From: Octopus sinensis | Taxonomy: Eukaryota | Direction of reading: 5' to 3' | DNA: 64,000 nucleotides | Assembly (NCBI RefSeq): GCF_006345805.1 | Contig: NC_043010.1 | Span: forward strand, 26,102,001-26,166,000 | Shown here: positions 33,891 through 60,296 of the stretch, in pieces | Numbering within the stretch: position 1 is the first letter of the stretch | Layout of the letters: each line of letters begins with the position of its first letter | Notes under the pieces: generated by a model | The model's input: the letters and a program-made list of their open reading frames with translations, nothing else | The model's database searches: none | What the model was told of the DNA's origin: nothing | Position numbers and translations under genes: made by a program

Positions 33891-33964
33891 ATATATATAT
33901 ACACACACACACATATATACATACATACATACATATATATACACATACACACACATATTGTATA

Positions 33965-35196: not shown

Positions 35197-35235
<39 letters not shown>

Positions 35236-38365: not shown

Positions 38366-38574
38366 TCAAGTCCTTAGAACCCTTCTAATAATCCTTGCTC
38401 TCCCTAAGAGACAAACTTTCTGCAGACGCTCTACCAGACATTCTATTCCAACCTGCTCCAGCCATTTGTCTTTATCTTGGTTTACTCTTCCCAACACACC
38501 AATTATAAAAGGCATGACCTTTACTGATTGCATGCTCCAAATTCTTCCTATTTCAAATTTTAAGGGATTGTACT
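38366..38574 (-). mobile_element. 3' end of a restriction-like-endonuclease (R4/Dong-type) LINE
   Basis: Encodes KFEIGRIWSMQSVKVMPFIIGVLGRV...RLQKVCLLGRARIIRRVL*, typical of RLE C-termini. Confidence 0.75.
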
Positions 38575-38607
<33 letters not shown>

Positions 38608-38824
38608 ATTATTGGGTACTTGAGCCAACTCTGGTGGTTACCTCCCCGCCCCATTGGGGAACTTTCATTGTTACATACTTTTGTTAGATATCATTATTGT
38701 TTCAATAGTGTATTCATTGTTTCTGTGTAAAATCCCCACTGTCCATGACTGCTGTATCATCCCCTATATATCAACTCTAGTGGCTAATGAATGAAATAAT
38801 AATAATAATAATAATGACAATAAA

Positions 38825-38883
<59 letters not shown>

Positions 38884-38905
38884 CAATAATAATAATAATA
38901 ATGAC

Positions 38906-38949
<44 letters not shown>

Positions 38950-39004
38950 CAATAATGATAATAATAATAATAATAATAATAATTATTATTATTATTATTA
39001 TTAA

Positions 39005-39042
<38 letters not shown>

Positions 39043-39211
39043 GCTTCATCATCATTATTATCTTTACTACTAGTGACTGTGTAATTAATGACTTTATTTC
39101 CCAACTACATGGTTACAAGTTCAATTCCCACCTGGGGTACTTTGAGCAAGCATCTTCTACTGTTGCTGTGAGCCAAACAAATGAACAGATTTGATAGATG
39201 GAATATATATA

Positions 39212-39726
39212 TACCAGGTTGAGGAAAAAGTTTGTGCGGCGTGTTAAAATAATGATTTCTTATGCAAGAACTAATTCAAAAACAGCAGACCATCATTTTC
39301 CACAACCTTCTGCCAATGATCTGCAAGCTTTCAGATTTGGTCAAAGTACCAATCCTTTGGCTTTGAATTCAAAAATTCTTGACAGGCTTCTTCAACTTCA
39401 TTGAATGACACAAATTGGTAACCTCTCATAAAGTGCTGCATTGATCAGAAGAGACTATGGTCAGATGGAGCAATGTCTGGACTATAGGCTGGATGTGGCA
39501 GAACTTCTTCTACTGTGCAATTCTTCAATCCTATTGCTGGTTTTTCTGGCAGTATGTGGCTTTGCATTGTCTTGTTGAAACAAAGCGCATTTTCGATAAA
39601 CAAATCTTGGGTACTTTTCAACCAGCGCATCATAGACTCGATCAAGTTGCTCGCAGTAAAACTTGGCATTGATGGCACAACCATTCAGCACAAGTTCAGT
39701 GCACGAACTTTTTCCTCAACCTAATA
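39212..39726 (-). mobile_element. Internally deleted mariner (about 515 bp) with both TIRs
   Basis: TIRs caggttgaggaaaaagtttgtgc and gcacgaactttttcctcaaccta. Retains the C-terminal motifs INAKFYCEQL, FQQDNAKPH and PHPAYSPDIAPSD. Confidence 0.88.
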
Positions 39727-41075
39727 TATATATAGTGGAGGCACAATGGCCCAGTGGTTAGAGCAGCGGACTCAGTTGGAGGATCACGATTTCAATTCCC
39801 AGACCGGGCGTTGTGTGTGTTTATTGGGCGAAAACACCTAAAGTTCCACGAGGCTCCAGTAGGGGGTGGTGGCGACCCCTGTTGTACTCTTTCGCCCCAA
39901 CTTTCTCTCACTCTTTCTTCCTGTTTCTTGAGTAACGCTGCGATGGACTGGTGTCCCATCCAGCTGGGGGAAACACATACGCCATAGAAACTGGGAAACC
40001 GGACCCATGAGCCTGGCTAGGCTTGAAAAGGGTGCATAAGAATAATAATATATATATATATACATATACACATATATGTATATATGAGTGTGTGCATAAG
40101 TTTGTGTTTATCCCACGATGGTCGTAAAATGGTTGTCACTATCAAACAAATAGTGTCAGTCATTTCCAACGTTTTGCAAGAACAAGCCTGGCCATGAGGA
40201 AATATTAACGTGCATGGATTGGTTGAAGGCCAGGCAGGGCATCAGACCACAGAAAATCTGCGTCGATAAGCACCATCCAAGCTATGCAAGCGTGGAAGAA
40301 CATTACAACGATGATAATGCTGATGATGTTGTCACCATAGTTGTTTAACCCCAGGTAAGCCCTGACCAATCAATCCTATGATCAAAGCCTTTCCTTTCGT
40401 TCTCTTTTCTCTCACTTTCAGATAAGTGTCAATGACTATATTATCTTCTTTGTCCTATATTTTAGAATATGCTTTCATAGAGACTTAGCTGTTGTTTCTA
40501 ACAGAAAGAGTGACCATTTGCATAGAGACATCTTCCCATTAACTCACTGTTAATAGGAGTAAGTTACTAATCTTGGTGGTGGTCAGAACGGCATGCTAAC
40601 ATTTCCAACAGCATATACCTCCATCATTAAGTTAAATTTGAAAGCACAATAACTTATCATTCAGCCATTTCTGACTTCTTCCCTTTTTTTCTAGTTTTGT
40701 GTTTTTGTAGTTCTTTTCGGTTTTTTTTTTGTTATTTTTGCACAACTCACTCACCACCGTTCATAGTTACAAAGATCAGATTTACCTAACCATACTACCA
40801 TACATCAGTAGGGAAGGGCAAGGAAGGAGGGGTCCACCTAAAGTGACACATTTAACTCTTTAGCATTTAAACTGGTCATATCCAGTACAAATATTCAACC
40901 AGTTTTATGTTCAATCTGAACAGATCCAGTCTCTCACACATACCTTGCAATGCCATTCTAAAAACATAAGCAATCTCATCATCAAAAACTTGAAGCTGTG
41001 AAATAATACATGAGGATTCAAAAACAGTGTGAATAAATAAGCATTTCATTCGACAATGTATTCTAAATACTAAAG

Positions 41076-41258
41076 CAGTGCTTTTCAAACCCCAAGGAAA
41101 CATTCCACTGGCTCAAGGAACCCCTGTGCAATAATTTAATAGTCTTATGCACACATATCTGCACAGGAGAATTAAAAATTACTGCTGATTTTAGCAGTTT
41201 TGTAACTTCTTGCGGAACCCCTGGACTGTGCTGGCGGAACCCTGGTTGAAAACCACTG
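41076..41258. mobile_element. hAT-type MITE
   Basis: Ends cagtgcttttcaaacc and ggttgaaaaccactg, with a perfect 8-bp TSD TACTAAAG. Confidence 0.85.
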
Positions 41259-41987
41259 TACTAAAGGGTTAAGGAGCACTGCGTTGGGGGTCTGCTGTAT
41301 AAGCCTGCTTATTATAAGCTTGGGGAACCTGGCAGAGGGGCATTGCAAACACAAGGGCTGCCCTTTGTGGAACACATTAAAATTGCATCACTGCCACACA
41401 TTAATATAAACTATTCTTTGGTTTGTTACATCATCTTATTTCTTTTAGGGAAATGATGGAATGATTGTAATCTTGGAATGAAAATGACAGAAATTATTAA
41501 AAAGAGGGACAAGGAGAGAATGACATGAACTTTCCTGAAAAAGAAAAAAACAATAATCAAAAGAGAGACACATCAAACTTTTCTCTTTTTCTTTTTTTTT
41601 TTTTGCTTTGAATAAATTCTATTCAAGAGAAGAAGAAAAATAATAAACAGATTGTTGACTGTAAACAAAAAACAAGACAAAAAATATATTTCAAGAGGGA
41701 CAAAAAATCAAAACAAACTGCAAATCAATTTTTGGATGCAAACTACAATAGATAACAATACATATAAACCAAGCCACATTATATATATATATATATGACA
41801 TACATATATATGCATATGACATCATGCACCAAAACAACTTGCAACTAATACAGTAAATGAGAATGGAAACACAATTATTTATTTAGTATATGCATGTGAT
41901 GTTTTATGTTTGTACATATATAAACAATATCGAACATGCATACACAAGGTATGTATTGTGCCAGTTGGGGGGGGGGGCTAAGATTCA

Positions 41988-42227
41988 TAGGTGTAAAAGA
42001 ATATATTATCAATTCACCTGGTGTAAAAACACCTGGGAGACATAGACAAGCGAAATGAATAGCATCAGATCCTGTTACAGAAGCAATATCAAAAAGTCAC
42101 AAAAATGACAAAATATTAATGACAACTGCTCCTCTAATGGGACTTGATGTGAGTTATCTTACTTGTCTATGACTCCCAGGTCTTTTTACACCAGCCGCAT
42201 TGATAAGAATATATTCTATTACGCCTA
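41988..42227. mobile_element. MITE with about 63-bp imperfect TIRs
   Basis: taggtgtaaaagaatatatt...ctgggagacatagacaag versus cttgtctatgactcccagg...aatatattctattacgccta. Confidence 0.7.
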
Positions 42228-43161
42228 TAAGAGCAGCCTAGCCATGGACTAGCAAAACACATTCCTTATGTAGGTGCCTGTAATATTGTTATATTGTTTA
42301 TATCCCTCAGGTGAATTCTCATTCATATTTCAAGATATATGTATGTATGTATTTATGAATATATATATATAGGGAGACTTATGCATACACACATGTATAT
42401 CTGCATATATATATATATATATCTATCACACAACCCTGGCTGACGAAGATTGTATTCCTAGCTCCTTTACTAAAGGGGTTATGTGCCTCTGGCCTGCAGG
42501 TCTGATGGCTCACCTATTTCGCTAAGAGCAAAATAAGTACGAAACCAATGATGATTTCCTGTCTGGTCATAACAACAACTACTTTTATCATAAATGTGTG
42601 TGTGTTTGTGCTGTATTGAAAATAGTGTTTCCATTCCCAAAATTCACTGCAGCCACAAAAGCTGTTTTTTTTTTTTCTTCTTAATTTTCAAAGTCAAACG
42701 GACATACAGCTAGGCATGCAAATATTTTGGTCAGGTAAATCTTCGGGCTCCCAACTCTACTGACTGCAAAGTGCCAGCATTTCTCATACATATGTATAGA
42801 TAAAGACAATGTAGTTATATTGATTATATATATATATATATATTATATATATATATAATATATTATACACACGCATACATACACAGACACACACATGTAC
42901 ATACATACACATTCACACACACATATATAACATGATATATATATGAAGTCTACAACACATTTTCTTTTCCTTCTTCATTCAAACAGACAGACAGACAGAC
43001 ATACACACACACTATGCTTCAAACAAAAACACACTACGTGTTCACTACACATCTGACTTTAAAATTTGTACGTGTTAAAGTTGTGTATTGCAGTATAGGA
43101 AAAAACAGGTTATTTTCTCACACCTAAATATTTTATGCAATTTATGCATGTGTGTAAACCT

Positions 43162-43209
<48 letters not shown>

Positions 43210-43786
43210 AACCTGTGACATATCTTTGTCTCCTCCCAGAAACTTACAAAAATATAAAGTGAGGTGAGACATGCTTTTTATTCTTAATATTATTAATATC
43301 ATTTTAAATTGGTCTCTATTTCACTTTATCTCTGCATCTACAGCAGTACCAGTAGAAAGAGTGAGATAATTGAGAAAATATAAAGAGAGAGAAAGCAAAG
43401 AAAATAAAGGAAAAAAAAGAGTGAAATGTAATTCCTTACACACACACACACACACACACATTTTATTTGTGGGTTAACAAGGCTACCAATAGTTTCATTT
43501 AAAAAGAAATCTCTTAAAAATTTTCAAGCCTTCCATATGAGAACATTGGTACTAGTCTCTATTTTGGATATCCTTTTATACTTTTCCATTAGTTTCGGGC
43601 ATGATGCAGAAGCACTGCTTTTCAAGGCCTTTCTTGATCTCACTGGTACTTATTTTATTTTATCGATCTCTACTTATCGACTGGCTAAGTCACCTTCTGA
43701 AGTAAAGGGACGCAATACAACACTTCATTTTTCATCAGTTAACATTCTCACACTGATGCCCACAACATACACACACAATACACACA

Positions 43787-43839
<53 letters not shown>

Positions 43840-44280
43840 ACACACACAAAGCCACCTACATGTTATGAAAAAATATAAGGAAAGATTATGGATGGAAAAT
43901 TTTACATATATAACTTATGTCTTTTTATAAAAAGTGAGATATAAAAAATGTTCAAATTTAGGAAAATGCTGGTGCAATGGTGACACTGAGAAGAATTGAA
44001 AATATAAAGCATAAAAAATTTTATAATTTTTCAAAACATGCATTAAAATTTGGAATTAAGCTTAAATCATTAGACGTAATTGCTTTGTTTCCTCATGAGA
44101 CGAAAAACTAATTGCAATAGAGACTCTTTCGCAAACACACACACGCTCACATGTATGCATAGATGCATGCATGCAGGAAAACAATATACGCACATATATG
44201 AACTAAATGTTTATGATTGTGTATGTGTTTTTGTGTATATTCATCCATGTGCATGTGTGTGCACATTTATGTATGTTTGC

Positions 44281-44314
<34 letters not shown>

Positions 44315-44387
44315 CAATATACACATCCATATATACATATATTCTTAGACGCAAGTACACAAACACACACATGTTAATGTGTATATT

Positions 44388-44457
<70 letters not shown>

Positions 44458-46758
44458 TATATGTAAGTACCTGAATAAATTTATCTATAGAGAGAGATAG
44501 ATGTACATACACACACACACACACACCTATATGGAGAGTAAAAATAGGATTAAAGGTGAAATTGATCTTATGTGGATTTTGAACACAGAACATAATGTGT
44601 TGTAACTAAATGTTGTAAAACATTTGGTCCAGCACTCTACCAACTGAGCCAATGTATAGATAGGTCGACAGATAGAGGTTACAAGAGAGAGAAAAAGAGA
44701 AACAGGAGATGGGGCTGAACTTAATTGCTAACATTGCAACATATTTGCAATAATATGTTTTAATACATCAGCTAAGGTTTAGGATAATACAGTTAAAGAA
44801 GAGCATATATATATATCTTATGTATATCTGTGTTTACATGTATACACATGAGATTTATATCATACGTACATTATATGTATGTGTGTATACATGTGTGCAT
44901 GTATGTCTGATGTGTGCGTGTGTGTGTGTCAGACCACTGGTAAAATGTAATCCAGTAAACTTGACCTTGGTTGGGTTGTCGGTCACTACACCAGCAACCC
45001 TACAAAGCTTACTTGTTAAGGCGGGTGGTCTTTGTAGGACATCTTGCAGGATGAGAAAGAAAACCTGCCAAAGGATGGATGAACTCAGGATAGTCAAGGG
45101 CTGTCCAACAGCTGGAAATGGGAGACTCCAAGTCTTTGTTTAAATATCTCTCTAGGAGAAGGAAATTCCAAAATAACACCCAACACATAGCAAAGCCAGA
45201 GATCTTACTCTTACTTCTTTCAGAAATGGACTATCTGTCTTTGTAAGTGGTGGTGTGCAAGCTGATATTGTCTTTAAATTTCAGTACAGGAATTGCTGAC
45301 AACGATTGTCTTTAATTTTTAGGATAAGATAATTTGTTAGTTGTGGTCATACTTGTCTACAAATTGACAGACACCATGTATGGACATATTTCATTGTTTT
45401 TACGTTTGGTTATACATAAAAAGAATTTGACATTAACTTGAAGGGTAACTCAATACTTTTTGGTAGAGTGAATAGTTATTAATATCCAAAAGATGATTTC
45501 AAAGCGTCAGCTTGCTTTCATCACATGTCTATTAAAACTAGATAAGCCATTGGATCTTATCAAGAACACCCAATGAGATTTGTTTGGACTATTAAATAGA
45601 AGGAGAGAAAAACAAAAGAAATAAAAGGAAAAAGAAAAAAGGAGTAAAAGATTAAAATTCAAAACACTGGAATTGGATAAAAAATATTAAAAAATAATAA
45701 ATAATATTATTGAAAGAAAATAAAAAATAAAAATTGCAACATAAATATAAAAACATTGCTTTGTTTTAGTGTTTTGTCCTTGTGTTTCTTGCTTTGTATT
45801 GTTTTGTTATTTTTTATCATAGTTATTTGTGTAAATCCAAGCTTAACACGATTATCTTAAATTTTTGCACAAGGCCAGCAACGTTGATGGGCAGCACCAA
45901 GTTGTTTACATTGGCATAGTTGGTGGTGGTCATCGTTTGTTGATTATGTTGGTTCACCAGATGCCGCAGGTTGTTGTCTGTTGCTGGCTTTTGCTGAATG
46001 AAAATGTATTTCTAGGGCTGCCTGTAGAAGTAACATCTAACAGATTTATGAACGGATCATGTGTTTTCCATGTTGGTTATGGAACAAAAACTAATGGCAA
46101 CAATTACACACTGGGAGAGACATACTGCTGGGATTATGGCAATTTAATTGGTATATAGCAATCTATGGCTGATTCATCACAACTGGACAATAATTGTGCT
46201 TTATTCATGGTGACAAAATCTATTTACCATCAGCTGGTTGTGAATGAGAATACAAACGTCAAGCGGCTGTCTTGATATCCTGGGATTACAGCCAAAACCC
46301 ACCTTTATATAGGGCACAGTGAGAAAGTTCTAGGAAGTTCAAACATGTGATGGGTTTCACACAGCGTTGTCACACATTTGGCCAATCATGCGAAATCACT
46401 GCTGCTTTGTTGTAATGTCTATCAGTTTTGAATCAGCTACAACATCAGCCCATGAACTTGACTCATAATTTATTTTATCAACCCTGAAAGAATGAAATAT
46501 AGAGTTAACCAAGGGCAGGATTTGAACTCAAAGAGTAATGAGAAAATGCCATCAGGCATTATGTCCACAGCTCTGACAATTCTGCCAGCTTATCACTTTC
46601 CTGTAGCCTAAAATAATAAATTAAATAAAAGTCATACAACCATAATGTTGAGGATTACATCCAACTCTTCGAATGAGTGGTGTGAAAGATTTTCAAGACA
46701 TTGGACTTACAGCCATACTGGAGCAGAGCCTTCAAGGGGCTCTATCATTTATCTAACC

Positions 46759-47047
46759 CAGTGTTTCTCAACCAATTTTTTTTTTATCTATGGACGTCAT
46801 TGATCCCTATTTCACTCAGATGGACACTCCTATTTATTTGATGTTTAAAATATTGAATATTGATTCTCCCTTTTTATTCTTTACTCTTTTGATGTTTAAA
46901 GGATTGAATTATATTTTTAGTTTTAAATATTATTAAAAATTGCCCAAAAGAAATTTTTAAAATATTTTGTGCATTGTAGAAGTATGATCAATTTATTGCA
47001 CATAAATATTAACAAAATCTTATAGGGACCCCGGTTGAGAACTACTG
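46759..47047. mobile_element. hAT-type MITE, same family as 36134
   Basis: Ends cagtgtttctcaacc and ggttgagaactactg; 8-bp TSD atctaacc/atataacc (one mismatch). Confidence 0.82.
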
Positions 47048-47630
47048 ATATAACCTACACACACAAACTTCAACATATTCTTTATTTAATAAGCTAATAA
47101 AAGTTACCTCCCTTGGAAACTATCCCGAGTAGAGTTACGCCCCTTAATTAGTATCGTCTGCTTCTCTTCCAAAGTTTGAAACATCAAACACTCGCAACGA
47201 TCCCCGCTCGTAAACAAACGTCTTTCCCTTAATTTACATCAATAAGACATACGAATTGTTTGTTCTATTCTAATTCTAATACAGCTGCATGTAAATTAAA
47301 TCCGATAAACTACAGTGTATGCCACATTCTACTCTACAACGAAGGTTTGGCTGCCGAGGCTTGGTCGATTCCTAATGATTCCAGTGATTGATTGGATATT
47401 CTGTTTGATTGATCCCAGAATGATGAGAAACCCCTCGCACTAAAAATGAATCCACTAGCAGGATTTGAACTCATAATAAAGGTATGAAGCTAACTGTGAA
47501 CCCATTGATTTTTATCACCTTATAGCTTGGTGATACATATGTAAATATTCATGCATATATACATACATACATATATACATATATATATACATACATATAC
47601 ATACATATGTATATATATATATATATATAT

Positions 47631-48059
47631 AAAATAAATATAAGAGAGTGGTCACTATATGGCTCACTCTAGCACCAGTTAATCCAAAAGGTTTCAACCA
47701 CAAAAATACATGTTTCCCATGAAAGTCAGTACGATTGTTAGCTCACACGGACAGGGCAAATAAAAAATAACAAAAATACAGATTATTTTGGGACAATTGT
47801 TTCGCTATTAATGAATTAAATGTAATTTTACTTACAAAAAAATCCACTTTTTTTGTAAGTAAAATTACATTTAATTCATTAATAGCGAAACAATTGTCCC
47901 AAAATAATCTGTATTTTTGTTATTTTTTATTTGCCCTGTCCGTGTGAGCTAACAATCGTACTGACTTTCATGGGAAACATGTATTTTTGTGGTTGAAACC
48001 TTTTGGATTAACTGGTGCTAGAGTGAGCCATATAGTGACCACTCTCTTATATTTATTTT
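47631..48059. repeat. Perfect palindrome with 212-bp arms and a 5-nt loop
   Basis: 47631-47842 is the exact reverse complement of 47848-48059 (compared by eye); loop tccac. Confidence 0.95.
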
Positions 48060-48194
48060 GTAAAAATATTATAATATATTATAAAATATTATAATAATCC
48101 AGGTTTCTCGGAGCACTAGGCCACTTGGTGTTGAATAGATATACTATTAAATTAGTATCTAATTCTCTCACCCTTATTAATTAATTATATATAT

Positions 48195-48249
<55 letters not shown>

Positions 48250-48591
48250 GTATATATATATATATACACATACATATATATACATACATATGTATATATA
48301 TATACTCTTTTACTTGTTTCAGTCATTTGACTGCGGCCATGCTGGAGCAACACCTTTAATCTAGCAACTCGACCCCGGGACTTTATTCTTTGTAAGCCCA
48401 GTACTTATTCTATCGGTCTCTTTTGCCAAACCGCTGTACTTCGATCAACTGTACCTTCACCTTTCACATGATAAATATTTTTAGTTGCTTCCCACGGTGT
48501 TTATGACCCAGATCGAACGAGTAAAACATAAGTTCTCGAATCAGACTACAGTACTACTTAAGAACAATGTATATATATATACTTATGTATA

Positions 48592-48638
<47 letters not shown>

Positions 48639-48709
48639 TATATATATATATATAGTATATATATATATAGTATATATATATATATATGTATATTATATAT
48701 ATATATATA

Positions 48710-48770
<61 letters not shown>

Positions 48771-50906
48771 TGTATGTATGTGAATTATCACAACTGTCTG
48801 ATGAACAGCTATAGAAAACTTTGAGTAACAATTTGTAAGTCAAAACACACAAAGTGGTCTGAAGTTTTTCTAATTCTTTGGTTACTTAAATAACACTTTT
48901 TGTTTTTAACAGGATGTCATTTTTCCCACCTAGCTTACATTTAATACCTTTATGAATATATCTGTGTGTGTGTGTGTGTGTGTGTGTATACTGTATATGA
49001 AGCTATGGTATTGTGGATTTAAAACAAAAATGTAAAGGAGTTATTAAAAATTGAAAACCTATCATGACCTTTGGCCCACCATCATCATCATTTAACATCC
49101 ATGTTCCATGCTGGACATTAAATGATGATGGTGGTAGACCACAAGTCATGATAGGTTTTCAATATTCAATAACTCCTATATATATATATATATATATATA
49201 TATACTGTTATACTATACATAATACTTATTATAAGATACAGTGGAATCTAGTGTGATGGAAATTTTGATACCAAATGAAAAATGTTTAAGTGAAGTTAGC
49301 AGTTCTTGTGTGTTTCTGAATGGCTAATAGATCTCTTCCATGCTGCAATCATTTTAGTTTCAATAAACAGTCTCCGATCAAATCACTTGTCTGGCGAGTA
49401 CACCTCTGGAGTACATATTACATGTTTGTTATGTATATATTATACAAATTTAAAGATGTTTGAAATAGAAAGAAGGAGAAAAAAAAAGAGGAAAACAAGA
49501 ACAATATGTTGTGAAAGTGAAGGAAGTCAGTTTCTTTCCTTTGTTCTTTCTTTCTCACCAATAAAGCAAAAACAAATACAAAACTTGGAACAAAAAGCTG
49601 AAACATAAATTTAAATGAGCACGAGTGTGTGTGTGTGTGTGCCAATGTGTGCATGTGTCCATGAACAAGTGTGTGCATATATGTATGTAATAAAGATACA
49701 TATTTATATATATATGCATATACATATATAGATTCCTATATGTATACACAAGACGCATATACATATATATCTTATATAACTGAAATGAAGAGGAGAAAAA
49801 AAATTAAACACAAATACACTTGAAAGTGCAAGAGAAGAAGAGAGAGTCTCTGAATCTGTAAGAAAGAGACGGAGAGATAGATAGAAAGAGAGAGAGAGAG
49901 CGTGTGCATATTAATCTATACACAGATACATACAAATATACATGTATGGTGTATATATGAATTATACAAGAGAAACAGCTCCAGAATAAAATCTTTATGT
50001 ATATGACATACTTAAGATATGTGCACCATTGAAAAGCCAGAATCTGCAATCTCTCATCCAGGAAAAAAGTCCTTTTATAATCATATTTATAAAAAACACA
50101 AACACATCAAACACAAAGGATTTTTTGCCCCCCCGGATGAAAATGCTGCTTCTGGTTTATCAACTATACACATAAGTATATCATATGAAGATATACATAT
50201 ATATGTATAAATACATATATGTGTATATATAAATAAGGTGTGTGTAGGTGTGTGTTTTGTGTTTATCACAGAATTGGTTTAAGAGTCTAAGAAGAGCTAC
50301 TAGAGGACAACTACAAGGACTACTTATGATGAGTGAAATTAATTGACTACAAATAGTGATAGAAGTAGTAGTGGGCGTGGTAGTAGCAGTAGTACTAGTA
50401 GAAGTAGTAGAAGTGGTAGTAATACTAGTAGAAGGAAAAAAATACTAGTCGCAGTAGTAGAGGTAGTAATAGTAGTTGTTGTAGTAAGAAGAAAAAGTAG
50501 TGGTGTATTGGTGCTAGTTAAGTAGCAGTAGTACTAAAAATACTAACTGGAGGAAGAGAAAGAAGAAGAAAAAGTCTAACTAGCAACTAAGACTAAAAGG
50601 AAAAAAAAATCAAAAGTTAAGGCTTTGTTAGCGAGTAAAGTTACCAGCGATTAAGTGATAAAAAAAATACTAATTAAATAATAAATAATGAATATATGTA
50701 ATAAATAAAATATCACTTATGATGAAATTGATAAAAGTCGTAATAAAAGAAAATAATACAGGTGATAGAGATAATTAAAAAAATAGGGATAATAATAATG
50801 ATAATAATATTATTAATAATAATAATAATAATAAATATTTTATATATATATAAAAAGGCTGATGATTAAAAGTAAGTCAACTGGTGCGTTATTATGTTTA
50901 CGTTAC

Positions 50907-50918
50907 CTCTGGGTGGCT
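50907..50918 (-). CDS. Candidate 12-nt microexon (AGCCACCCAGAG; SHPE if phase 0) of the NDRG-family gene
   Basis: Minus strand: long pyrimidine tract, ttaac, more pyrimidines, ttgctgccgtttag|AGCCACCCAGAG|gtaacg. Frame-preserving and on the same strand as the host gene. No transcript evidence available. Confidence 0.55.
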
Positions 50919-51212
50919 CTAAACGGCAGCAAGTTTTGAAAATATGAAAAGAGAAAGGACCAACATCGTTAACAGAGAGAAAAGAACACTGGAAAAGAAT
51001 TTTGTACTTGGATTTTTATTTATCTATTTATTTATTGATTTAGGCTTTTGTTTATGATGTTTATTTTAATGTTTCTATTTTTACTTTATTTTATTTTTGA
51101 ATTTATATTTGATTTTTAATTTTAGTTTTTAATTTTGTTTAAATTGTGGCAGCAGGGCAAGTGGAGTTGATTCAAATATAGAAAGAGGACAACAACAATA
51201 ATTATGAAAATG

Positions 51213-51252
<40 letters not shown>

Positions 51253-51728
51253 GAATGATTTTTTTCACTAAACACAAGGGTTCACAATAGGATCGAGGAC
51301 AATACAAGATGACAAGGAATAATAATAATATTAATAATATTATTATTATAATAATAATAATGATAATCCTTTCTACTATAGGCACAAGGCCTGAAATTTT
51401 TGGGGAGGGAGCCAGTCGATTAGATCAACCCCAGTATGTAACTGGTACTTAGTTTATCAACCTCGAAAGGATGAAAGGCAAAGTCGACCTTTGAACTCAG
51501 AACATGGTGACAGGCGAATTACCACTATGCATTTTGCCCAAAGTGCTAACAATTCTGCCAGCTCTCCACCTTAATAATAAAAATAACAACAACAATAACA
51601 ACAATGATGATGATGATGAATGATGATGATGATGATGATAATAATAATAATAGCTGAAAAAGAAATCCTGAAAAAATTTTAAAAGGAAAAGAGACTAATT
51701 AGTCTGTGTGAGTGAGTGTGTGTGTATA

Positions 51729-51778
<50 letters not shown>

Positions 51779-53139
51779 TATGTGTGTGTGCATGTGTGTG
51801 TGTGTGTGTGTGTATAATATAATACAATATAAAGACTTAACCACTGTATATTTCATTTGCTGGTTGAGATACTCAACAACCTTCCCTTGCAATGTCCTAT
51901 TTTGTTCACAATCTGACACAAGATTTTGGTTCTAAGTATGTGACCTGTTGTTTTGTTTTTTTCCCTACCTAAGGAAAAAAATGATATTTTTGTTCCTTCT
52001 CCAAACCTGACACTTATACGACTTGTACTACTTTGTCAACATAACCCTTTTGTCCTCAGACCCACCTGAAACCATCCTCAGTTCTTTGATACAAACTGTG
52101 TAGTTTAAAGTGTTCTACATAAAAACCTTCCATTAAAAATTCATGTTAATTCAGGTTCCAAATCCCGGCTTAATAATGGTAAAATTATTTTACTAAATTT
52201 TTAATTTCTTTCACGATTAATTGAAACAAAAGTAGGGTATTTCAACAGAAATATGATAACAAAAGGGTTAATATAAATGTGGATAGGTTAATATTGGATG
52301 CTGTTAACCCTTTTGATACTAACCCACCCAAGACAGCACCTAGTTTTGTAATAGAAACCTCTTGTTTTAAAGTGGCCTAAATTAAAACCTTCCGGCAATA
52401 TGTCCTGTTTATCTACGCTCCAGTTTATTCATCGTTTTAGCTTTCAAATGATGTGATCTTGCTGTTTCAGTGAGCAGGCCAACATTCCCACTGATTGGAA
52501 AGCTAGTCTGTTGCAGGATTAACCATTTGGAGTTGAGTGGACTGGGGCAATGTGAAATGAAGTGTTTTGCTCAAGAACACAACATGCTGCCCAGTCCGAG
52601 AATCGAACCCATGATCTTGTGATCATGAGTTGAACACCGTAACCACTAGGCCATGCTCCTTCACCCACTTAACTAGTTATCAAAGTTATCACCCATGGCA
52701 GGACGAAGGGCAAGGTAATATATAAAAAAAGTGATTACAGCAAAGAACTTTGATGCAGTAAGGAATCAGCTAATCCATATTCCAGGCTGGAAATGTCTTT
52801 GAGAGGAGCTCGTTCGTGAACAGTCCATTTAAACAATCATTAGGGCTTTTATTTTATCAGCCTCAGAAAGATGAAAAGCAAAGCTGATCTTGACAGGATT
52901 TGAACCTAGAATATAAAGAGCTCTGACTATGCACTGCAAAGCATTTTGTCCAACGCTTTTATGATCTTGCTAGATTTCTTAACAGGGGCAGACAAAGCCA
53001 GAGATCTTAAAGGAGACAGTTGATCATTAAAATGTCTCTGGGATCCTACAACTTTTCTATAGATTTCTAAAACTGACACATAGCCAGGTTTTTGTAAAAA
53101 AAAAGGGGGGGGGGGCAACCGCAATTTGGAAAAATGAAA

Positions 53140-53640
53140 CTAATCACATATTTTGATAAAAACAAACAAGCCACATATTTTAGACAAAAAGGGGGCTAAC
53201 TCCATGTTTTGACAAAAGGGGGCTAACTCCATGTTTTGACAAAAAAGGGGTTAACCATATATTTTGACAAAAAAGGGGCTAACCATTTAACTTGGTGAAA
53301 AGGGTCTAACCACATAATTTGGTGAAAAGAGGCTGGCCATGTTTTGGCAAAAAGGAGCTAGCCACATATTTTGACAAAAAAGGGGCTAACCATTTAACTT
53401 GGTGGAAAGGGTCTAACCACATAATTTGATAAAAAGGGGTTAACCATGTTTTGACAAAAAGGGGTTAACCATGTTTTGACAAAGAGGGGCTAACCATGTT
53501 TTGACAAAAAGGAGTTAACCATATATTTTGACAAAGAAGGGGCTAACCATTTAACTTGGTAAAAGGGTCTAACCACATAATTTGGTAAAAAGGGGCTAAC
53601 CATATTTTGGCAAAAAGGGGCTAACCACACACTTAGATGA
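53140..53640. repeat. Minisatellite of about 20 units of 23-26 bp, consensus AAAAAGGGGCTAACCATGTTTTGAC
   Basis: Tandem units are directly visible. The variant pair aaccatttaacttggt...gggtctaaccacataatttg recurs three times. Confidence 0.9.
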
Positions 53641-54363
53641 AAAGAAGTTAGGCACTTATATAATGTAAGCACCAGTACCAGTTTTTGCTTTATTTTATTG
53701 ATAAAAGGCAAAGTCAACCTGAGCAGGATTTGAGCTCAGAACACAAACGAATACATCAAAGGCATTTTGTGCCAGTTGCTCTACCAATTCTGCCAATCCA
53801 CTACCTGTAACCGTTAGCATAATAATAATAGTTATGATGATAATAATAGTTATGATAATGATGATGATGATGATGATGATGATAATAATAATAATAATAA
53901 TAATAATAGCAGCAATAACAACAAAAATAAAATAATCATAAATGTAGAACATTTTGAAGAAAAATATTGGTTTCAAATTTTGCCACAAGGACAACAATTT
54001 TAGGGTTGGGAGTAAGTCGATTACATCGACCCCAGTATTCAACTGGTACTTATTTTATCAATCTTGAAAGGACGAAAGGCAAAGTTGACCTCAGTGGAAT
54101 TTGAACTCAGAATGTAAAGATGGATGAAATGCCGCTAAGCATTTTGCTCTGCATGCTAATGATTCTGCCAGCTCGCCACCTTAAATTTGAAGAAAAAAAT
54201 ACTGAATGAAAGAATGGAAAGTTCAAATGAGATTCAGATTTAATGAACATGTTTCGACATTAGATGCCATGTTTTAGCACCCGATTAATTTTTCCTGACC
54301 AAATGATGACAACTGAGCAACATGAAAAGATTATACAAATACAAACACACATATACATATGTA

Positions 54364-54412
<49 letters not shown>

Positions 54413-54453
54413 CATACATGTATATGTATACATATATGTATGTATATATATAT

Positions 54454-54505
<52 letters not shown>

Positions 54506-54562
54506 GTATATGTGTGTGTGTGTATATATATATATATACATATATATATGTGTATGTGTATG

Positions 54563-54634
<72 letters not shown>

Positions 54635-55524
54635 TGTATACATACATAGATAAGAGAAAACATTTAGACTGACTGATAATGACAAAATATCCCAAAAACA
54701 ACCAAAACCAATATATATAAAATGAACATCACGCATTCCACCATCAAAATTAAAACAATTGTATACTTCAATAATGACTTCATGCACAGCTCAAACAATG
54801 GAGATATGAATATTTCAAACAAACATTCCTATATATATATGTGTGTGTGTGTATATGTATATATATACACACACACACATGTATGTATACACACACAAAG
54901 ATATATTTTTGTTTGTTTTTACATGCGACAATAGGATGTACATATATATATTTTTTTCCACATTTATACATATATATATATATATATATATAATATATAT
55001 GTATATATATATGTATATATATGTATAATATACAATAGCAAGAAGCAACTTGGACTTCATTTCCATCTTTCTATGCCTGCCATCGAAGTGTAGAAAATTT
55101 CAAAAAATCTCAACTTCGAGTTTGAAGTTTGTATATTGTGATGATAATACCTAAATTTGAGTGAAATAATATTAATTTTCTAAATCTACTTAAATTGCTT
55201 ACTTCTCTAAAATATAATCATATAAATACATGTAGGTATAAGTGTGTATGTGTGTTTTGTGCTTGTGTGTGTATGTGTGTTTGTGTGCATGCGTGTGTGT
55301 GTGCATGTGTGTAAATTATAATCTAAGTAATATAACTATTAAGTGGACCTTAAGACTAACACTAGACTGCAGAATTTTGGTTTCACATATATATTTAAAA
55401 AAGAAATATTTTTTAAAAATAGCGTAAAGAATATTGAATCAAGATTCTCATTCCTGCTTGAAACTGACTCTTTTATTGAGTGTTTTCAACAAAAGTATGT
55501 CTGCCTGTCTATTTCTATCCATCC

Positions 55525-55567
<43 letters not shown>

Positions 55568-56985
55568 AATCTATCTATCTATCTATCTATCTATGTCTGT
55601 TTGTCTATTTCTATCTCTGTCTGTCTGTCTGTCTGTCTGTTTCTATCTATCAATATTCCAATAATTGTTTATGTATTTTATTTAGTTTTGTTTTTTACAT
55701 GATGAGGCTGAGAGTAGCAGCAGCAGGAATCTAAACAGATTAAGAAGTTAAAGCCAAGTTTTGGTCATCTTTTCTTAACCATTTTCACACCAACTCACTG
55801 AAGTTAATCCTGGTTCTATCATCTCAAAACTACCTATTTTAACCTGTTATATCTAAAATTAAAACTTCTGTCAATTTTCACACAAAAAACACTTTATAAG
55901 TTAAGAAGAAATTATCAGCTTAATAACAAAAATAGTGTTATTTTAATAAATCCCAGCAAATTTTAGATGATTTAATAACATAATCAAACAATGGCAGTAG
56001 TATTTCATTAGAGGTAAGGTCAGGAAAGAACTTCCAATAATCTTGGAATACTTGAGAATTTTAAAATAAGCATTTTGCTCTTTTATTTCTATTGTATTAT
56101 TTAATGTCATTTATTTCAGACAGGAATTGTTTTCCATTAATTCCAAACTAAAGAAATTAGGAGAGTTAAAAAGGTTTATCACTCCAAGATCTGAAAGCTA
56201 TTATGAAATTATTTGTTAACGTTCTTGAATCTTGTTAAATTTCTTTCAACCACTTGGGAGTATTTCAAATCTTCACCAGACTTCCCCTTCCCAGCAAATT
56301 TTCTAAACTGATGTAACTTCTTATTTACTAGAAAAAAAAAATAATGCAATTTTCATCATCACCATGCAAAAGTACATTTGAAAATAATCTGGTGAAATTG
56401 TGAAACACTTCAAGTGGTTGCAAGAAATTTAACAAGTTGCAAATTCTCTATTTGAATCGTATTGGATAAAGTAATAATATCTGCAGTGTATAGTCTGAGT
56501 TTAATATAAAAATTTCTTTCACTAGAAAGCCTTGCTCTTATACCACCGATGTATAAACCTGTTCATACATGGAGGCCTCAGGCACGTCAATTGGGTCACT
56601 GATACCCAGATTATAAATCTGATTATACACATACTATCAGTGACATTGCCAAATAGGCTCTAATTCTAGGCTTAGGCTAGTTTGTTTTGTGTATATATTA
56701 GAAGCTCTGTTTCTTTTCGATCTACTGAAGATCGTTCGTGTAACATGTGAAACCGTATGTGGAACTATTATTATTAGAAGCCTAAGATGACTATTTTTGA
56801 TTTACTATTAATACAATGTACCCCTTTATTGCACCGACCACTTAATTCAGAACATATATATTCTATTTATATATATATAACTGTGTTTTCTGTGTGAGGG
56901 TGTGTGCATGTGTGTGTGAGCATGTGCATGCATACACACACATTCATGGCAATGAGTAGTAAATAGTCTAGTATATATATGTATG

Positions 56986-57019
<34 letters not shown>

Positions 57020-57227
57020 CATATATACATAACATTTATATATGCATATATGTATATATTTATATGTGTGTCTGTGTTGGGTGGGCATGCATTTTTTGCA
57101 CGTTCATTTAACTTATAAAAGCATGGAAAATTTCATGCCATAATGATAATGATTATAATGATGATAATGATAATGATGTTGATGGATTTTATCCATGCAA
57201 TATTATGTTAAAAGAAAATAGTACTAA

Positions 57228-57288
<61 letters not shown>

Positions 57289-59398
57289 TTGATAACAAAA
57301 TAATATAAATAAATATAAATGTTGAAAATTTTATTGGTTTAACAAGAAACACCTATTTCCTAATCCTTAAGATTAAAGAACCTATTTCTTAATCCTTAAG
57401 ATTAAAGAGTAAGATTACAGATTTTTCATTTCTGCTTTCAAGATGTTTCTGTAGAAACCTATGACTGCAAGTCCTCTAGAGTATCAGAATCATCTAATGA
57501 GTTCCATACTGCCATTAAAACTGCCTACAGGTAAACTTTTGGCTGTGTTGCCTTGCTAGCTGATAACAAGTATTTCATACCCGCTATAAGGGAAAATATA
57601 CATAAAATATATAGGGGATAGTTTTCCAATGGTACAAAATTATATATTTAATTTATTTATTCATTGTTCTTCCATAACCCACTGGTTGTCATAGGAATAG
57701 TTCCTAAGACATAGAAGAACATGATGTTCCAAGCTGATAAGCAAAAGTGTTGTTACAGCATTGAAAACAGAGTTAATAATTAGCCATAACGGTATGCTGC
57801 TTTACTACAGTTACTGCCTAATTACAGTGAGATAAATTAAATGAGCCTGAATTCATTAGTTGGTTCAATGTCTCATCTCAGCCCCATATGGATGGAGCCA
57901 GCTCAGTGCCAGGGATTCTTTTATTCCTAAAGACTATTATCAATTCATCAATACAGCCATGAAAAAAATTATTCTTTCTTGCATGAGTTGTAAAATAAAC
58001 TTAATTTTATGAACTCAACATATGTCTGAAATTAAAAGCAATGATGTGAATTTTGTCATTTTATTTTTAATTATTTTTTCTTCATAAAACTTGGATTTTT
58101 GTTAATAAAATGTAAATTCAAAGAGCCATCTTTTTGGTGGATATATTCGCCAAAGTAAGTTTATTGTCACTTAAATCATAAAGAAATCATAATTTGACCA
58201 AATTGTTTTTGAATTTGGAATGGTTGATAAAAGAAACCTACGAGCAAATTAATGTAGTATTTTCTATTCTGTAAAAATATACACAGAGATCTGAATTCAT
58301 GTACCTATTTATCTATTTATCATAATATATGCATATATATTTATATATAAGAGGGTGCTGAAAAGTTCCTAGCCTTAAGTGTATTGCGAAAGGCCTGGTT
58401 GGAAAACCAAACTTCTGAGTTCTTTTATAGAGCTTAGAAAACTGAAGGACCGCTGCAATAAGTGTGTGAATCTGAGAAGGGAATTTGTTGAATAAAATCA
58501 TAATTAACTGATCCTCCTGTATTTTCTTTTACCCAAAGCCAGGAACTTTATAGTACTTCTTCATATGTATACTTACACACACACACACACACATATATAT
58601 ATACACACACAAATGTCTAGTGTATGTATATGTACATATGCATACATACATATAAATAACTTAATAAACGTATACATATATACATGTATGCAGATAATTG
58701 GTGAGAGCTGGATATACTCAGTAGAGAAAACACATAGCACCCAAATGAATTTGAACTTAGACTCCAAAGTCTTCATCCAGGATTAGGTGTGTGTGTGTGT
58801 ATATATATATGTATGTGAGTGAGAAAGTATATCTATATCTATAATATCATATTATATTACAATTCCCTAATGCATCATAATCTCCATTTCTTTTTTTATC
58901 AATCTTAATATAATTAGGTTTGCGTATTTTTTCTTTTCCTTTCTATGAGAGTCTCATAACTCTCAAGGAAATGAAATGAGGGGAAGGAAGAAGAAAGGAG
59001 GAAGAAAAGTGAGGATGAGGAAGAAGCAAGGAGGGGGATCAGGAGGAAGAGCAAGAAGAGGAAGACAGCGGCAGGAGGAGGAACAAGAGTGGGTAATTCA
59101 GGGAGAGGGATCAAAATACGCGTAACAGTATACAAATTAATGGATTAACATAACTAATATTATTAATACACCTAACAGATTAATATATCAAATACATTGA
59201 CATAACTCATAAACTCATTCTGTAGCAAAAATAAATGTTAGATAATTAAAGACTAAATTTTTGAAGCATTTTCCATGCCATTCCTCATTTCTCCATTTTT
59301 TCCCTTTCATTTTGGAATATATACATATATATATGCATATACATATATATATATGCATATACATATATATATACATATACATATACATATATATATAC

Positions 59399-59430
<32 letters not shown>

Positions 59431-59431
59431 A

Positions 59432-59464
<33 letters not shown>

Positions 59465-59516
59465 ACATATATACATATATATATATACATATATATATAT
59501 ACATATACATATATAC

Positions 59517-59554
<38 letters not shown>

Positions 59555-59567
59555 TATATATATATAG

Positions 59568-59606
<39 letters not shown>

Positions 59607-60296
59607 TACGAAAGAATCTATCAACAGAGATGCTACATTCTTTAACTGTGATAGTAGTAGTAATAGTAATAATAATAATAACGATATAATAATAATAGGA
59701 ATAATAATAAGAATAATAATGATAACAACAGTTTGTAGCGCTAGTAATAGTAGTGAAAGTAGTAGTAATAATAATAATAGTAGTAGTAGTAGTGGTAGTA
59801 GTAGTATCAATGGCAGCCAAGACTGTAGTCTGTGCCAGCAAGCAGAGGCAACAACAACAGGGAACTAAGAATGATGGACACCATTCCAGATGTAGGGGCA
59901 TAAAAGCAGGCAGTCAGCATCCTTAGCCAATACCATGCAGTTTGTCGGCTAAGATTCTTACATTGCTTTTTTTCTCTGAAGACTTTGTCTACAACGAGGA
60001 CAGAAATCAGTGTGAAGAAAAAAAAATTAAGTTGTCAATAACGATTCCGACAAAATAATCATAATAATATTAATAATAATTATAATATTAATAATAATAA
60101 TAATAATAATGTTAATGCCACAAAGGCATTAGATGGGGGGATATTACAGGGAAATGAAACGTTACAAAAAAGAAGTGAGGAGGAGTGTTAAAAATTAAAT
60201 CGAATGAAATGAAAACCAACACCATAATAACAATAATAATAACAATAATAACAATAATAATAATAATAATAATAATGATGATAATAATAATAATAA

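What the first reader, a model, noticed from the sequence alone, without database searches (positions are those of the whole stretch)
50895..51000. Candidate 12-nt neural microexon with an SRRM/eMIC-type splice signature in the NDRG-family gene
The gene strand reads tcttttccagtgttcttttctctctgttaacgatgttggtcctttctcttttcatattttcaaaacttgctgccgtttag|AGCCACCCAGAG|gtaacg. It has an extended pyrimidine tract, a branch-point-like TTAAC, two UGC motifs within 13 nt of the AG and a frame-preserving length. This is the known architecture of microexons activated by SRRM3/4-type eMIC proteins in bilaterian neurons. I found no other exon between it and the phase-0 exon at 32464, so inclusion would insert SHPE just before FEKAENK in the NDRG cap region. 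The exon sits in non-repetitive sequence 18.4 kb into an intron of at least 31 kb, and standard annotation would likely miss it.
Basis: partly seen in the sequence, partly recalled or inferred. Interest (0 to 1): 0.75.

Follow-up and report, generated by a model that had tools for sequence, protein, structure and literature searches.

The report
Real, conserved 12-nt NDRG microexon
The 12-base candidate is a genuine, alternatively spliced microexon of an octopus NDRG-family gene, already present in an older public gene model and conserved across molluscs, but whether it is neuron-specific and SRRM/eMIC-dependent was not tested.

Summary
The sequence is as described. On the minus strand, AGCCACCCAGAG (window 50918..50907) lies between ...cttgctgccgtttag and gtaacg.

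It is a real cassette microexon, on three lines of evidence:
- In the 22.7-kb orthologous intron of Argonauta hians, the only strong non-repeat match to the window's intron is this exon and its flanks. The exon is 12/12 identical and both UGCs are kept (E 1.6e-14).
- The NCBI model XP_014768142.1 (Octopus bimaculoides, old isoform X2) reads HRFGS-SHPE-FEKAENK. It is otherwise identical to the skipping isoform.
- RNA-seq contigs from two decapodiform cephalopod species carry NQSE or NLSE at the same junction, alongside skipping forms that are otherwise identical.

Twelve-base exons at this junction also occur in Haliotis (STDE), Aplysia (ATPE), Mercenaria (SSMT) and crustaceans (RLIE/RLVE).

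An older public annotation did not miss the microexon.

The cis signature fits eMIC-type microexons: a 68-nt AG-free zone, UCUC tracts, two UGCs, and TTAAC at -51. Neural specificity and Srrm234 dependence remain untested. The gastropod and crab orthologues lack the UGCs.

The feature is real but already in public records. The breadth of its conservation is the interesting part.

The parts
50907..50918 (-). 12-nt cassette microexon AGCCACCCAGAG (Ser-His-Pro-Glu), phase 0 to phase 0
   Evidence: Sequence read. It is 12/12 identical in Argonauta L006 63413..63424. The peptide SHPE sits at this junction in O. bimaculoides XP_014768142.1 (P0283). The decapodiform transcript orthologue is AACCAATCAGAG.
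50919..50990 (-). Acceptor region. It holds the AG (50920-50919), the UGC pair (50931-50926), pyrimidine/UCUC tracts (about 50958-50938 and 50987-50974), branch-point-like TTAAC (50972-50968) and a 68-nt AG-free zone
   Evidence: The proximal ~45 nt, including both UGCs, are conserved in Argonauta (alignment A1). The TTAAC is not conserved there.
50901..50906 (-). Donor site GAG|gtaacg (C at +5). Argonauta has gtaaag and Haliotis has gtaaca
   Evidence: Under the simple PWM it scores as well as the gene's true donors.
50898..50965 (-). Block conserved with Argonauta hians, covering the exon and its flanks
   Evidence: blastn gives 82% identity over 74 nt, E 1.6e-14. This is the best intronic match in the whole intron.
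59962..59988 (-). Second alternative exon, 27 nt, ACAAAGTCTTCAGAGAAAAAAAGCAAT (TKSSEKKSN).
   Evidence: Found. It matches O. bimaculoides isoform X1 XP_014768141.1 (P0280) and TQTSEKKSN in cephalopod transcript L005/P0156. The Argonauta orthologue is a 30-nt exon at L006 51905..51934.
59934..59939 (-). TGCATG (Rbfox-type GCAUG) 22 nt downstream of the 27-nt exon's donor. It lies inside a block conserved with Argonauta
   Evidence: Its function is inferred from the motif only.
32349..32464 (-). Downstream constitutive exon A (FEKAENK...FVEAFM, ending AA|gtaagg in phase 2)
   Evidence: It is identical to the Octopus proteins.
31080..31115 (-). Exon B, 36 nt (N)RTSIAETIGKVS
   Evidence: It matches the Octopus proteins.
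28867..29014 (-). Exon C (CPCLLVTGSKA...NVLTEK)
26551..26602 (-). Exon D (PEEFAESFLYMVQGLGM)
24847..24992 (-). Coding part of the last coding exon (MGGVPMPRVQRSAS...PPRVAQH and the stop codon)

Best explanation
Window 50918..50907 (minus strand) is a genuine, evolutionarily conserved, alternatively included 12-nt cassette microexon. The gene is the Octopus NDRG-family gene that NCBI names 'ZK1073.1-like'.

Shown:
- When included, it is spliced between the exon ending ...LHRFGS (outside the window) and the exon starting FEKAENK (32464).
- It adds Ser-His-Pro-Glu to a flexible loop between two helices of the cap-like region of the alpha/beta-hydrolase fold.
- It is one of two alternative small exons in this junction. 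The other is the 27-nt exon at 59988..59962. Public models show three forms: neither exon, the 27-nt exon only, or the 12-nt exon only.

Inferred: an exon this short cannot be defined across itself. Its recognition probably relies on the conserved upstream intronic enhancer, which combines UCUC-rich pyrimidine tracts, a distal branch point, a long AG-free zone and a UGCUGC just before the AG. That is the arrangement through which the eMIC domain of Srrm234 (SRRM3/4 in vertebrates) recruits early spliceosome factors in neurons.

My confidence that the exon is real and alternative is about 0.95. My confidence that it is eMIC-dependent and neural-enriched is about 0.5.
For: - Conservation. The Argonauta hians intron (22.7 kb) and the window intron are almost unalignable, yet window 50965..50898 matches L006 63360..63433 at 82% identity, E 1.6e-14. 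The exon is 12/12 identical and the AG, both UGCs and gtaa are kept.
- Annotation. P0283 (XP_014768142.1, O. bimaculoides) equals P0282 plus SHPE at HRFGS|FEKAENK. The window's exons A-D are 100% identical to these proteins.
- Transcripts. Logan RNA contigs L008/L009 (SRR8281668, SRR9970006) read GGC TCG|AAC CAA TCA GAG|TTT GAA. P0277 (7 contigs) equals P0276 (27 contigs) plus NQSE. P0278 equals P0157 plus NLSE.
- Same-junction 12-nt exons elsewhere. Haliotis genomic TCGACTGATGAG (STDE, L001:444) matches annotated isoforms. Others are Aplysia ATPE, Mercenaria SSMT, Candidula VTAE (predicted), and the crab Portunus RLIE, which is a separate exon.
- Structure. The AlphaFold2 model of P0283 (pTM 0.80) places residues 178-181 in a loop with pLDDT below 50, between helices 164-175 and 188-204. 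This is inside the helical insertion between strands 129-135 and 235-240.
- Family. PDB matches are NDRG1/2/3, with E down to 1.7e-33.
- Cis code. It matches the features published for eMIC exons: long AG-exclusion zones, UGC near the 3' splice site, UCUC tracts and a CUAAY branch point (PMC8797185). It also matches the bipartite UCU_CUC[N1-50]_UGC enhancer (bioRxiv 10.1101/2024.09.17.613571).
Against: - I saw no transcript from the window's own individual or species. XP_014768142.1 is a computational Gnomon model whose read support I could not inspect, and here it survives only through the EukProt copy of an older release.
- No tissue information was available for any contig.
- The donor has C at +5, whereas all four neighbouring true donors are GTAAG.
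- The orthologous exons of Haliotis, Candidula and Portunus have no UGC within 22 nt of the AG, so the exon can exist without that motif.
- The TTAAC branch-point candidate is not conserved in Argonauta.
Confidence: 0.9

Rival explanations
1. The microexon is real, but it is not an eMIC/Srrm234 target or not neuron-specific. Inclusion is driven by other factors (for example Rbfox, Nova, PTBP or Elav-type regulators, or plain splice-site strength), or it occurs broadly at a low level.
For: - Orthologous 12-nt exons in abalone, a land snail and a crab lack UGC near the AG.
- Even among human SRRM3/4-dependent microexons, UGC is present in only 74-79% and is neither strictly necessary nor specific.
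- The inclusion and skipping forms are both common in decapodiform assemblies (7 vs 27 and 5 vs 2 contigs), and the tissue of origin is unknown.
- The neighbouring 27-nt exon carries a different signature, a downstream GCAUG.
Against: Both UGCs and the pyrimidine tract just upstream are conserved between Octopus and Argonauta, while the rest of the intron has diverged. The full set of features (AG-free zone, UCUC, UGC, distal branch point) matches the published eMIC code.
Confidence: 0.4
2. It is a chance pseudo-exon: an AG...GT pair in an intron that merely looks like an exon and is never spliced in.
For: Post hoc motif thresholds inflate its apparent rarity. The donor is GTAACG rather than GTAAG.
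Against: The exon is perfectly conserved with its splice sites in Argonauta. The exact SHPE insertion is in an NCBI Octopus model. Decapodiform transcripts carry an orthologous 12-nt insertion at the same junction.
Confidence: 0.02
3. The conserved 70-nt island is some other intronic element, such as an enhancer, a small RNA or a recursive splice site, and the SHPE isoform model is an annotation artefact.
For: XP_014768142.1 appears only in an older release. Conserved islands in long introns can be regulatory DNA.
Against: There is no Rfam match at E <= 1. Conservation is centred on AG|12 nt|GT. Independent RNA assemblies in other cephalopods contain the orthologous 12 nt as exon sequence. Same-position 12-nt exons are annotated in several molluscs.
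Confidence: 0.03

Closest known systems
O. bimaculoides RefSeq model XP_014768142.1 (ZK1073.1-like isoform X2, older release; P0283)
   Same: It is the same exon. The protein reads ...LHRFGS-SHPE-FEKAENK... and otherwise equals the skipping isoform XP_014768144.1. The window's exons A-D encode identical residues.
   Different: It is a computational model and nothing has been published on it. Here it is held only through EukProt, while XP_014768144.1 now carries the label 'X2'. That suggests it was dropped on re-annotation, which is my inference.
SRRM3/4- or Srrm234-eMIC-dependent neural microexons (vertebrates, Drosophila)
   Same: It is at most 27 nt and frame-preserving, it inserts a few residues into a surface loop, and it is highly conserved together with its flanks. 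It has a long AG-free zone, UCUC-rich pyrimidine tracts, UGC between the tract and the AG, and a distal branch point.
   Different: Neural specificity and eMIC dependence were not tested. The donor is weaker (+5 C) than the strong 5' splice sites described for mammalian microexons. Orthologues outside cephalopods lack the UGC.
Twelve-base exons at the same NDRG junction in other protostomes: Haliotis STDE, Aplysia ATPE, Mercenaria SSMT, Logan/JGI bivalve transcripts MDEE/LKEE/LHDT, Portunus RLIE, Hyalella RLVE, barnacle SLEE
   Same: The junction (HRFGx|FEKAENK-type helix) and the length (12 nt) are the same. Most end in GAG (Glu). They sit as separate tiny exons in a long intron (L001:444, L010:34422). 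They are alternative with a skipping form.
   Different: The peptides diverge, with only a loose x-x-[P/S/D/E]-E pattern. There is no UGC near the AG in the three non-cephalopod genomic copies examined. For arthropods, common origin versus recurrent gain is undecided.
Deeply conserved neural microexons of APBB1/2/3 and MADD (bioRxiv 10.64898/2026.09.05.749416)
   Same: These are very short in-frame exons kept over very long evolutionary distances in signalling or adaptor proteins.
   Different: Those two are reported as neural-specific in vertebrates, insects and outgroups. For the NDRG exon, tissue specificity is unknown. I saw no insertion at this junction in the human NDRG1 aligned here, nor in NDRG2-4 as I remember their sequences.
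Lineus longissimus (nemertean) ZK1073.1-like isoforms X1-X4
   Same: Two independent small cassette exons (33 nt DKCLPTIREKG and 15 nt DANAM) sit at exactly this junction. This parallels the 27-nt plus 12-nt pair in Octopus and Mercenaria.
   Different: The lengths and peptides differ. Both exons can be included together in Lineus. No mollusc model seen here includes both.

Membership tests
Microexon (cassette exon of 27 nt or less) | Length of 27 nt or less, bounded by AG and GT | tested here: met
   The exon is 12 nt, in the context ag|AGCCACCCAGAG|gt.
Microexon (cassette exon of 27 nt or less) | Present in mature mRNA in some transcripts and absent in others | tested here: met
   O. bimaculoides models exist with and without SHPE. 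Decapodiform RNA contigs exist with NQSE or NLSE, and identical ones without. I did not see reads from the window's own organism.
Microexon (cassette exon of 27 nt or less) | Preserves the reading frame | tested here: met
   The length is a multiple of 3 with no stop codon. It fits phase 0 between ...HRFGS and FEKAENK.
Microexon (cassette exon of 27 nt or less) | Exon and flanking intron conserved above the intron background | tested here: met
   It gives the best intronic blastn hit against Argonauta (E 1.6e-14, exon 12/12 identical). The other hits are SINE-like or low-complexity sequence.
eMIC (Srrm234 / SRRM3/4)-dependent neural microexon | UGC motif(s) between the pyrimidine tract and the 3' AG | tested here: met
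   There are two, at -13..-8, and both are conserved in Argonauta. They are absent in the Haliotis, Candidula and Portunus orthologues.
eMIC (Srrm234 / SRRM3/4)-dependent neural microexon | Long AG-exclusion zone, UCUC-rich pyrimidine tract, distal strong branch point | tested here: met
   The AG-free zone is 68 nt. There are 18 pyrimidines in the best 20-nt window. TTAAC lies at -51. The TTAAC itself is not conserved in Argonauta.
eMIC (Srrm234 / SRRM3/4)-dependent neural microexon | Inclusion enriched in neurons | not testable with these tools
   No tissue-resolved RNA-seq was available. A search for the run accessions in papers found nothing.
eMIC (Srrm234 / SRRM3/4)-dependent neural microexon | Inclusion requires the eMIC domain | not testable with these tools
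   This needs a knock-down, a knock-out or a minigene co-expression experiment.
NDRG family (Pfam Ndr, PF03096) | Sequence membership of the host gene | tested here: met
   PF03096 is recorded on the orthologues P0158 and P0002. The Octopus protein matches human NDRG1/3/2 structures with E 1.7e-33 to 8e-24.
NDRG family (Pfam Ndr, PF03096) | Insertion lies in the cap-like helical region | tested here: met
   In the AlphaFold2 model, SHPE is residues 178-181. They lie in the loop between helices 164-175 and 188-204, within the helical insertion between strands 129-135 and 235-240.

The most novel reading that the evidence does not exclude
The SHPE exon is the cephalopod copy of a very old alternative 12-nt microexon at the HRFGx|FEKAENK junction of NDRG (ZK1073.1-like) genes. 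It would be shared across Mollusca and perhaps inherited from the protostome ancestor, given crustacean RLIE/RLVE/SLEE and annelid SSSK. In molluscs it is paired with a second alternative exon of 27-30 nt that carries a different, Rbfox-type signature. In cephalopods it would have acquired, or retained, a UGC enhancer that puts it under neuronal Srrm234-eMIC control. If it is also neural in the other phyla, it would join the very few deeply conserved neural microexons known.
Probability: 0.3. Interest if true: 0.65.

Novelty: already known. Interest (0 to 1): 0.4.

Why it matters
For genome annotation, this case shows that a 12-nt exon deep in a 27-kb intron can be recovered from sequence alone. 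It also shows that gene models handle it inconsistently. It is present in one older Octopus release. It is absent from the Argonauta, Acanthosepion and O. sinensis models, and apparently from the current O. bimaculoides set.

For biology, one inter-helix loop in the cap-like region of NDRG proteins turns out to be a hotspot for tiny alternative exons in molluscs, a nemertean, an annelid and crustaceans. This suggests that the length or charge of the loop tunes an interaction of these non-catalytic hydrolase-fold proteins.

For the evolution of splicing, the exon offers a tractable test of whether a microexon older than its UGC enhancer was later brought under the eMIC programme in cephalopod neurons.

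Tried and rejected
- The first protein search with SHPE plus exon A (43 aa) returned only one genomic ORF, later recognised as Haliotis. The word index is patchy, so that near-empty result meant little.
- Exact look-ups of two window ORFs (50944..51057 plus strand, 28795..29004 minus strand) found nothing.
- My first reading of exon A's 3' end as phase 0 was wrong. The donor is AA|gtaagg. Correcting this revealed the 36-nt exon B.
- My own motif scan missed two real exons: the 27-nt exon and the Haliotis STDE exon. Their donors score low on the simple PWM. The chance statistics therefore cannot stand alone.
- The 9.9 kb of Mactra sequence upstream of exon A showed no convincing orthologue.
- The Acanthosepion pharaonis locus could not be fetched because the gene range exceeds 100 kb. 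UGC conservation in decapodiforms is therefore unknown.
- Literature: no paper links NDRG with a microexon at this site. The one preprint that analyses octopus neural exons has no supplements held. The run accessions are not mentioned in any held paper.
- Rfam found nothing in 50700..51200.
- The conserved island at 36982..36910 is a SINE-like repeat, not an orthologous element.
Full report
**What is in the sequence.**
- The exon AGCCACCCAGAG occupies 50918..50907.
- The acceptor AG is at 50920-50919 and the donor gtaacg at 50906..50901.
- Two UGC triplets sit at -13..-8 (50931-50926).
- The nearest upstream AG is 68 nt away.
- UCUC-rich pyrimidine runs lie at about -20..-40 and -56..-69.
- A TTAAC puts a candidate branch A at -51.

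**Gene context.** The gene is on the minus strand and belongs to the NDRG family. I mapped these exons:
- Exon A, 32464..32349 (FEKAENK...FVEAFM). It ends AA|gtaagg in phase 2, not phase 0 as I first read it.
- Exon B, 31115..31080, 36 nt.
- Exon C, 29014..28867.
- Exon D, 26602..26551.
- The last coding exon, from 24992.

Their translation is 100% identical to Octopus bimaculoides and O. sinensis 'ZK1073.1' proteins, so the window is from the genus Octopus. The protein matches human NDRG1, NDRG3 and NDRG2 structures with E from 1.7e-33 to 8e-24. Its orthologues carry Pfam PF03096.

No exon encoding the preceding ...NPTAESYLVLHRFGS segment lies in the window.

At 59988..59962 the sequence reads ...tgtcctcgttgtag|ACAAAGTCTTCAGAGAAAAAAAGCAAT|gtaaga, encoding TKSSEKKSN.
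- It is the insertion in O. bimaculoides isoform X1 (XP_014768141.1).
- It is TQTSEKKSN in a cephalopod transcript from a JGI metatranscriptome (P0156/L005).
- Argonauta has an orthologous 30-nt exon, LKSSSDKTTN, at L006 51905..51934, with a conserved downstream ACUGCAUGG.

The intron that hosts the 12-nt exon is therefore 59961..32465, or 27.5 kb.

**Chance.** I set thresholds at the candidate's own values: donor PWM, at least one UGC, a pyrimidine window, and an AG-free zone. With these it is the only hit in 128 kb. The product of the marginal frequencies predicts 0.17 in-frame hits per 64-kb strand, or 0.03 with two UGCs. The thresholds are post hoc. The same scan also missed two real small exons because their donors score low. 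I therefore treat this result only as 'unusual, not proof'.

**Conservation.** The NDRG locus of Argonauta hians, another octopod, was retrieved whole (L006).
- Its orthologous intron is 22.7 kb.
- blastn of the window's intron against it gives four intronic matches.
- The best is window 50965..50898 against L006 63360..63433, at 82% identity and E 1.6e-14.
- The others are a SINE-like repeat and low-complexity sequence.

The alignment (A1) reads ccaaaccttgctgctgtttag|AGCCACCCAGAG|gtaaagtaa. All 12 exon bases, the AG, both UGCs, about 45 nt of upstream flank and gtaaNgtaa are kept. Identity then decays on both sides.

**Transcript and annotation evidence.** The 90%-identity cluster of the Argonauta protein contains three O. 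bimaculoides models:
- XP_014768144.1 (342 aa): HRFGS|FEKAENK.
- XP_014768141.1 (351 aa): HRFGS|TKSSEKKSN|FEKAENK.
- XP_014768142.1 (346 aa): HRFGS|SHPE|FEKAENK.

The three are identical apart from these insertions. The SHPE model is held only through EukProt, under its old label 'isoform X2', and XP_014768144.1 now carries 'X2'. I infer that the SHPE model was dropped on re-annotation.

In decapodiform cephalopods, Logan RNA assemblies give two matched pairs:
- P0276 (27 contigs, no insert) and P0277 (7 contigs, +NQSE).
- In a second species, P0157 (no insert) and P0278 (+NLSE).

Each pair is identical but for the four residues. The nucleotide sequence GGC TCG|AAC CAA TCA GAG|TTT GAA (L008, L009) shares 9 of 12 bases with the octopus exon. 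An intron-retaining contig (P0200) confirms that the upstream exon ends at ...HRFGS.

**Wider distribution.** Four-residue insertions at the same junction occur in many protostome NDRG proteins:
- Haliotis STDE.
- Aplysia ATPE.
- An unnamed Logan transcript, TTPE.
- Mercenaria SSMT, whose isoforms also include a 27-nt alternative, KHLKDSNKR.
- Bivalve transcripts MDEE, LKEE and LHDT.
- An annelid, SSSK.
- Crustaceans RLIE, RLVE, SLEE, KLEE and NIEE.

Genomic copies confirm that they are separate 12-nt exons:
- Haliotis L001:444...ctttcttttcatgttttctttcatggctttag|TCGACTGATGAG|gtaaca.
- The crab Portunus L010:34422, CGCTTGATTGAG, in a 10.4-kb intron.
- A predicted, unannotated GTGACTGCTGAG (VTAE) 7.2 kb upstream of exon A in the snail Candidula.

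The nemertean Lineus has two independent cassette exons here, of 33 and 15 nt. Orthology within molluscs looks likely: same junction, same length, a terminal GAG, x-x-P-E peptides in Octopus and Aplysia, and similar flanks in abalone and octopus. For arthropods, common origin and recurrent gain cannot be separated with these data.

**Position in the protein.** In an AlphaFold2 model of the SHPE isoform (pTM 0.80), the four residues (178-181) lie in a loop with pLDDT below 50. The loop sits between helices 164-175 and 188-204. It is inside the helical insertion between strands 129-135 and 235-240, which is the cap-like region. The length of this linker varies among homologues, so it tolerates insertions.

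**How it probably works.** It is shown that the exon is alternative and conserved together with its proximal upstream intron. It is inferred that recognition of such a short exon depends on that intronic element.

The element has every cis feature reported for eMIC-dependent exons in flies and mammals: long AG-exclusion zones, UGC close to the 3' splice site, UCUC-rich tracts and a strong CUAAY-type branch point (PMC8797185). It also fits the bipartite UCU_CUC[N1-50]_UGC enhancer (bioRxiv 10.1101/2024.09.17.613571). The eMIC isoform of Srrm234 is described as neuronal in non-vertebrate bilaterians.

Against over-reading this:
- UGC is found in only 74-79% of human targets and is not strictly required.
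- The abalone, snail and crab orthologues lack it.
- No tissue data were available.

I put eMIC dependence and neural enrichment at about 0.5.

**Novelty.** The exon itself is already in a public gene model, and its orthologues are annotated in several molluscs, so the feature is known at database level. I found no paper that describes it. Its breadth appears to be undescribed, as does its pairing with a second small alternative exon that carries a GCAUG signature. A 2026 preprint reports only two microexons confidently ancestral to bilaterians, in APBB and MADD.

Noticed in passing
A conserved TGCATG (Rbfox-type) lies 22 nt downstream of its donor. The Argonauta orthologue is a 30-nt exon at L006 51905..51934, unannotated there.
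   Followed up: yes
L006 51950..52250: In Argonauta, the conserved ...ACTGCATGGTATTGGCT... sequence downstream of the 30-nt exon is followed by a tandem array of about 53 nt that repeats the GGTATTGGCT-type unit. A second TGCATG sits at about 52198.
   Followed up: no
L001 444..455 (Haliotis-like contig, Logan DRR299178): This is the genomic copy of the annotated abalone 12-nt exon STDE, 2.06 kb upstream of exon A. Its upstream flank (ctttcttttcatgttttc) and donor (gtaaca) resemble the octopus flank (ctttctcttttcatattttc, gtaacg), although the two classes diverged long ago.
   Followed up: partly
L002 2789..2800 (Candidula unifasciata): A predicted 12-nt exon GTGACTGCTGAG (VTAE) lies in the orthologous intron. 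Its acceptor is strong (84-nt AG-free zone, 19 of 20 pyrimidines). The partial snail gene model starts only at FEKAENK.
   Followed up: partly
L010 34422..34433 (Portunus trituberculatus): A separate 12-nt exon CGCTTGATTGAG (RLIE) sits in the homologous 10.4-kb intron of a crab NDRG gene. Hyalella isoforms X2 and X3 differ at this junction by RLVE, along with other differences at the N-terminus.
   Followed up: partly
Lineus longissimus proteins P0005, P0153-P0155: Four RefSeq isoforms differ only by two independent small exons (DKCLPTIREKG, 33 nt; DANAM, 15 nt) at the same HRFGS junction.
   Followed up: partly
window 4485..6200 (-): A 571-aa open reading frame with reverse-transcriptase-like sequence, i.e. 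a retrotransposon, downstream of the NDRG gene's 3' end. A degenerate related copy lies at about 27945..28427.
   Followed up: no
window 36910..36982, 54010..54078, about 60400..61200 and others: There are many copies of a SINE-like repeat whose translation reads ...AFHPFGVDK.... The repeat is shared with Argonauta, which explains the other blastn 'islands' in the intron.
   Followed up: partly
window 49003..49149 (-): This ORF (MTCGLPPSSFNVQH...) resembles the spurious first exon of the old Octopus model A0A0L8HYZ1 (P0284). That model joins such a sequence directly to FEKAENK, which is probably a mis-annotation built on a repeat.
   Followed up: no
window 50355..50486 (-): A serine-codon-rich low-complexity block about 430 nt downstream of the microexon aligns at 72% with Argonauta L006 65559..65699 and is collinear with the microexon. 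This may be compositional rather than functional.
   Followed up: no
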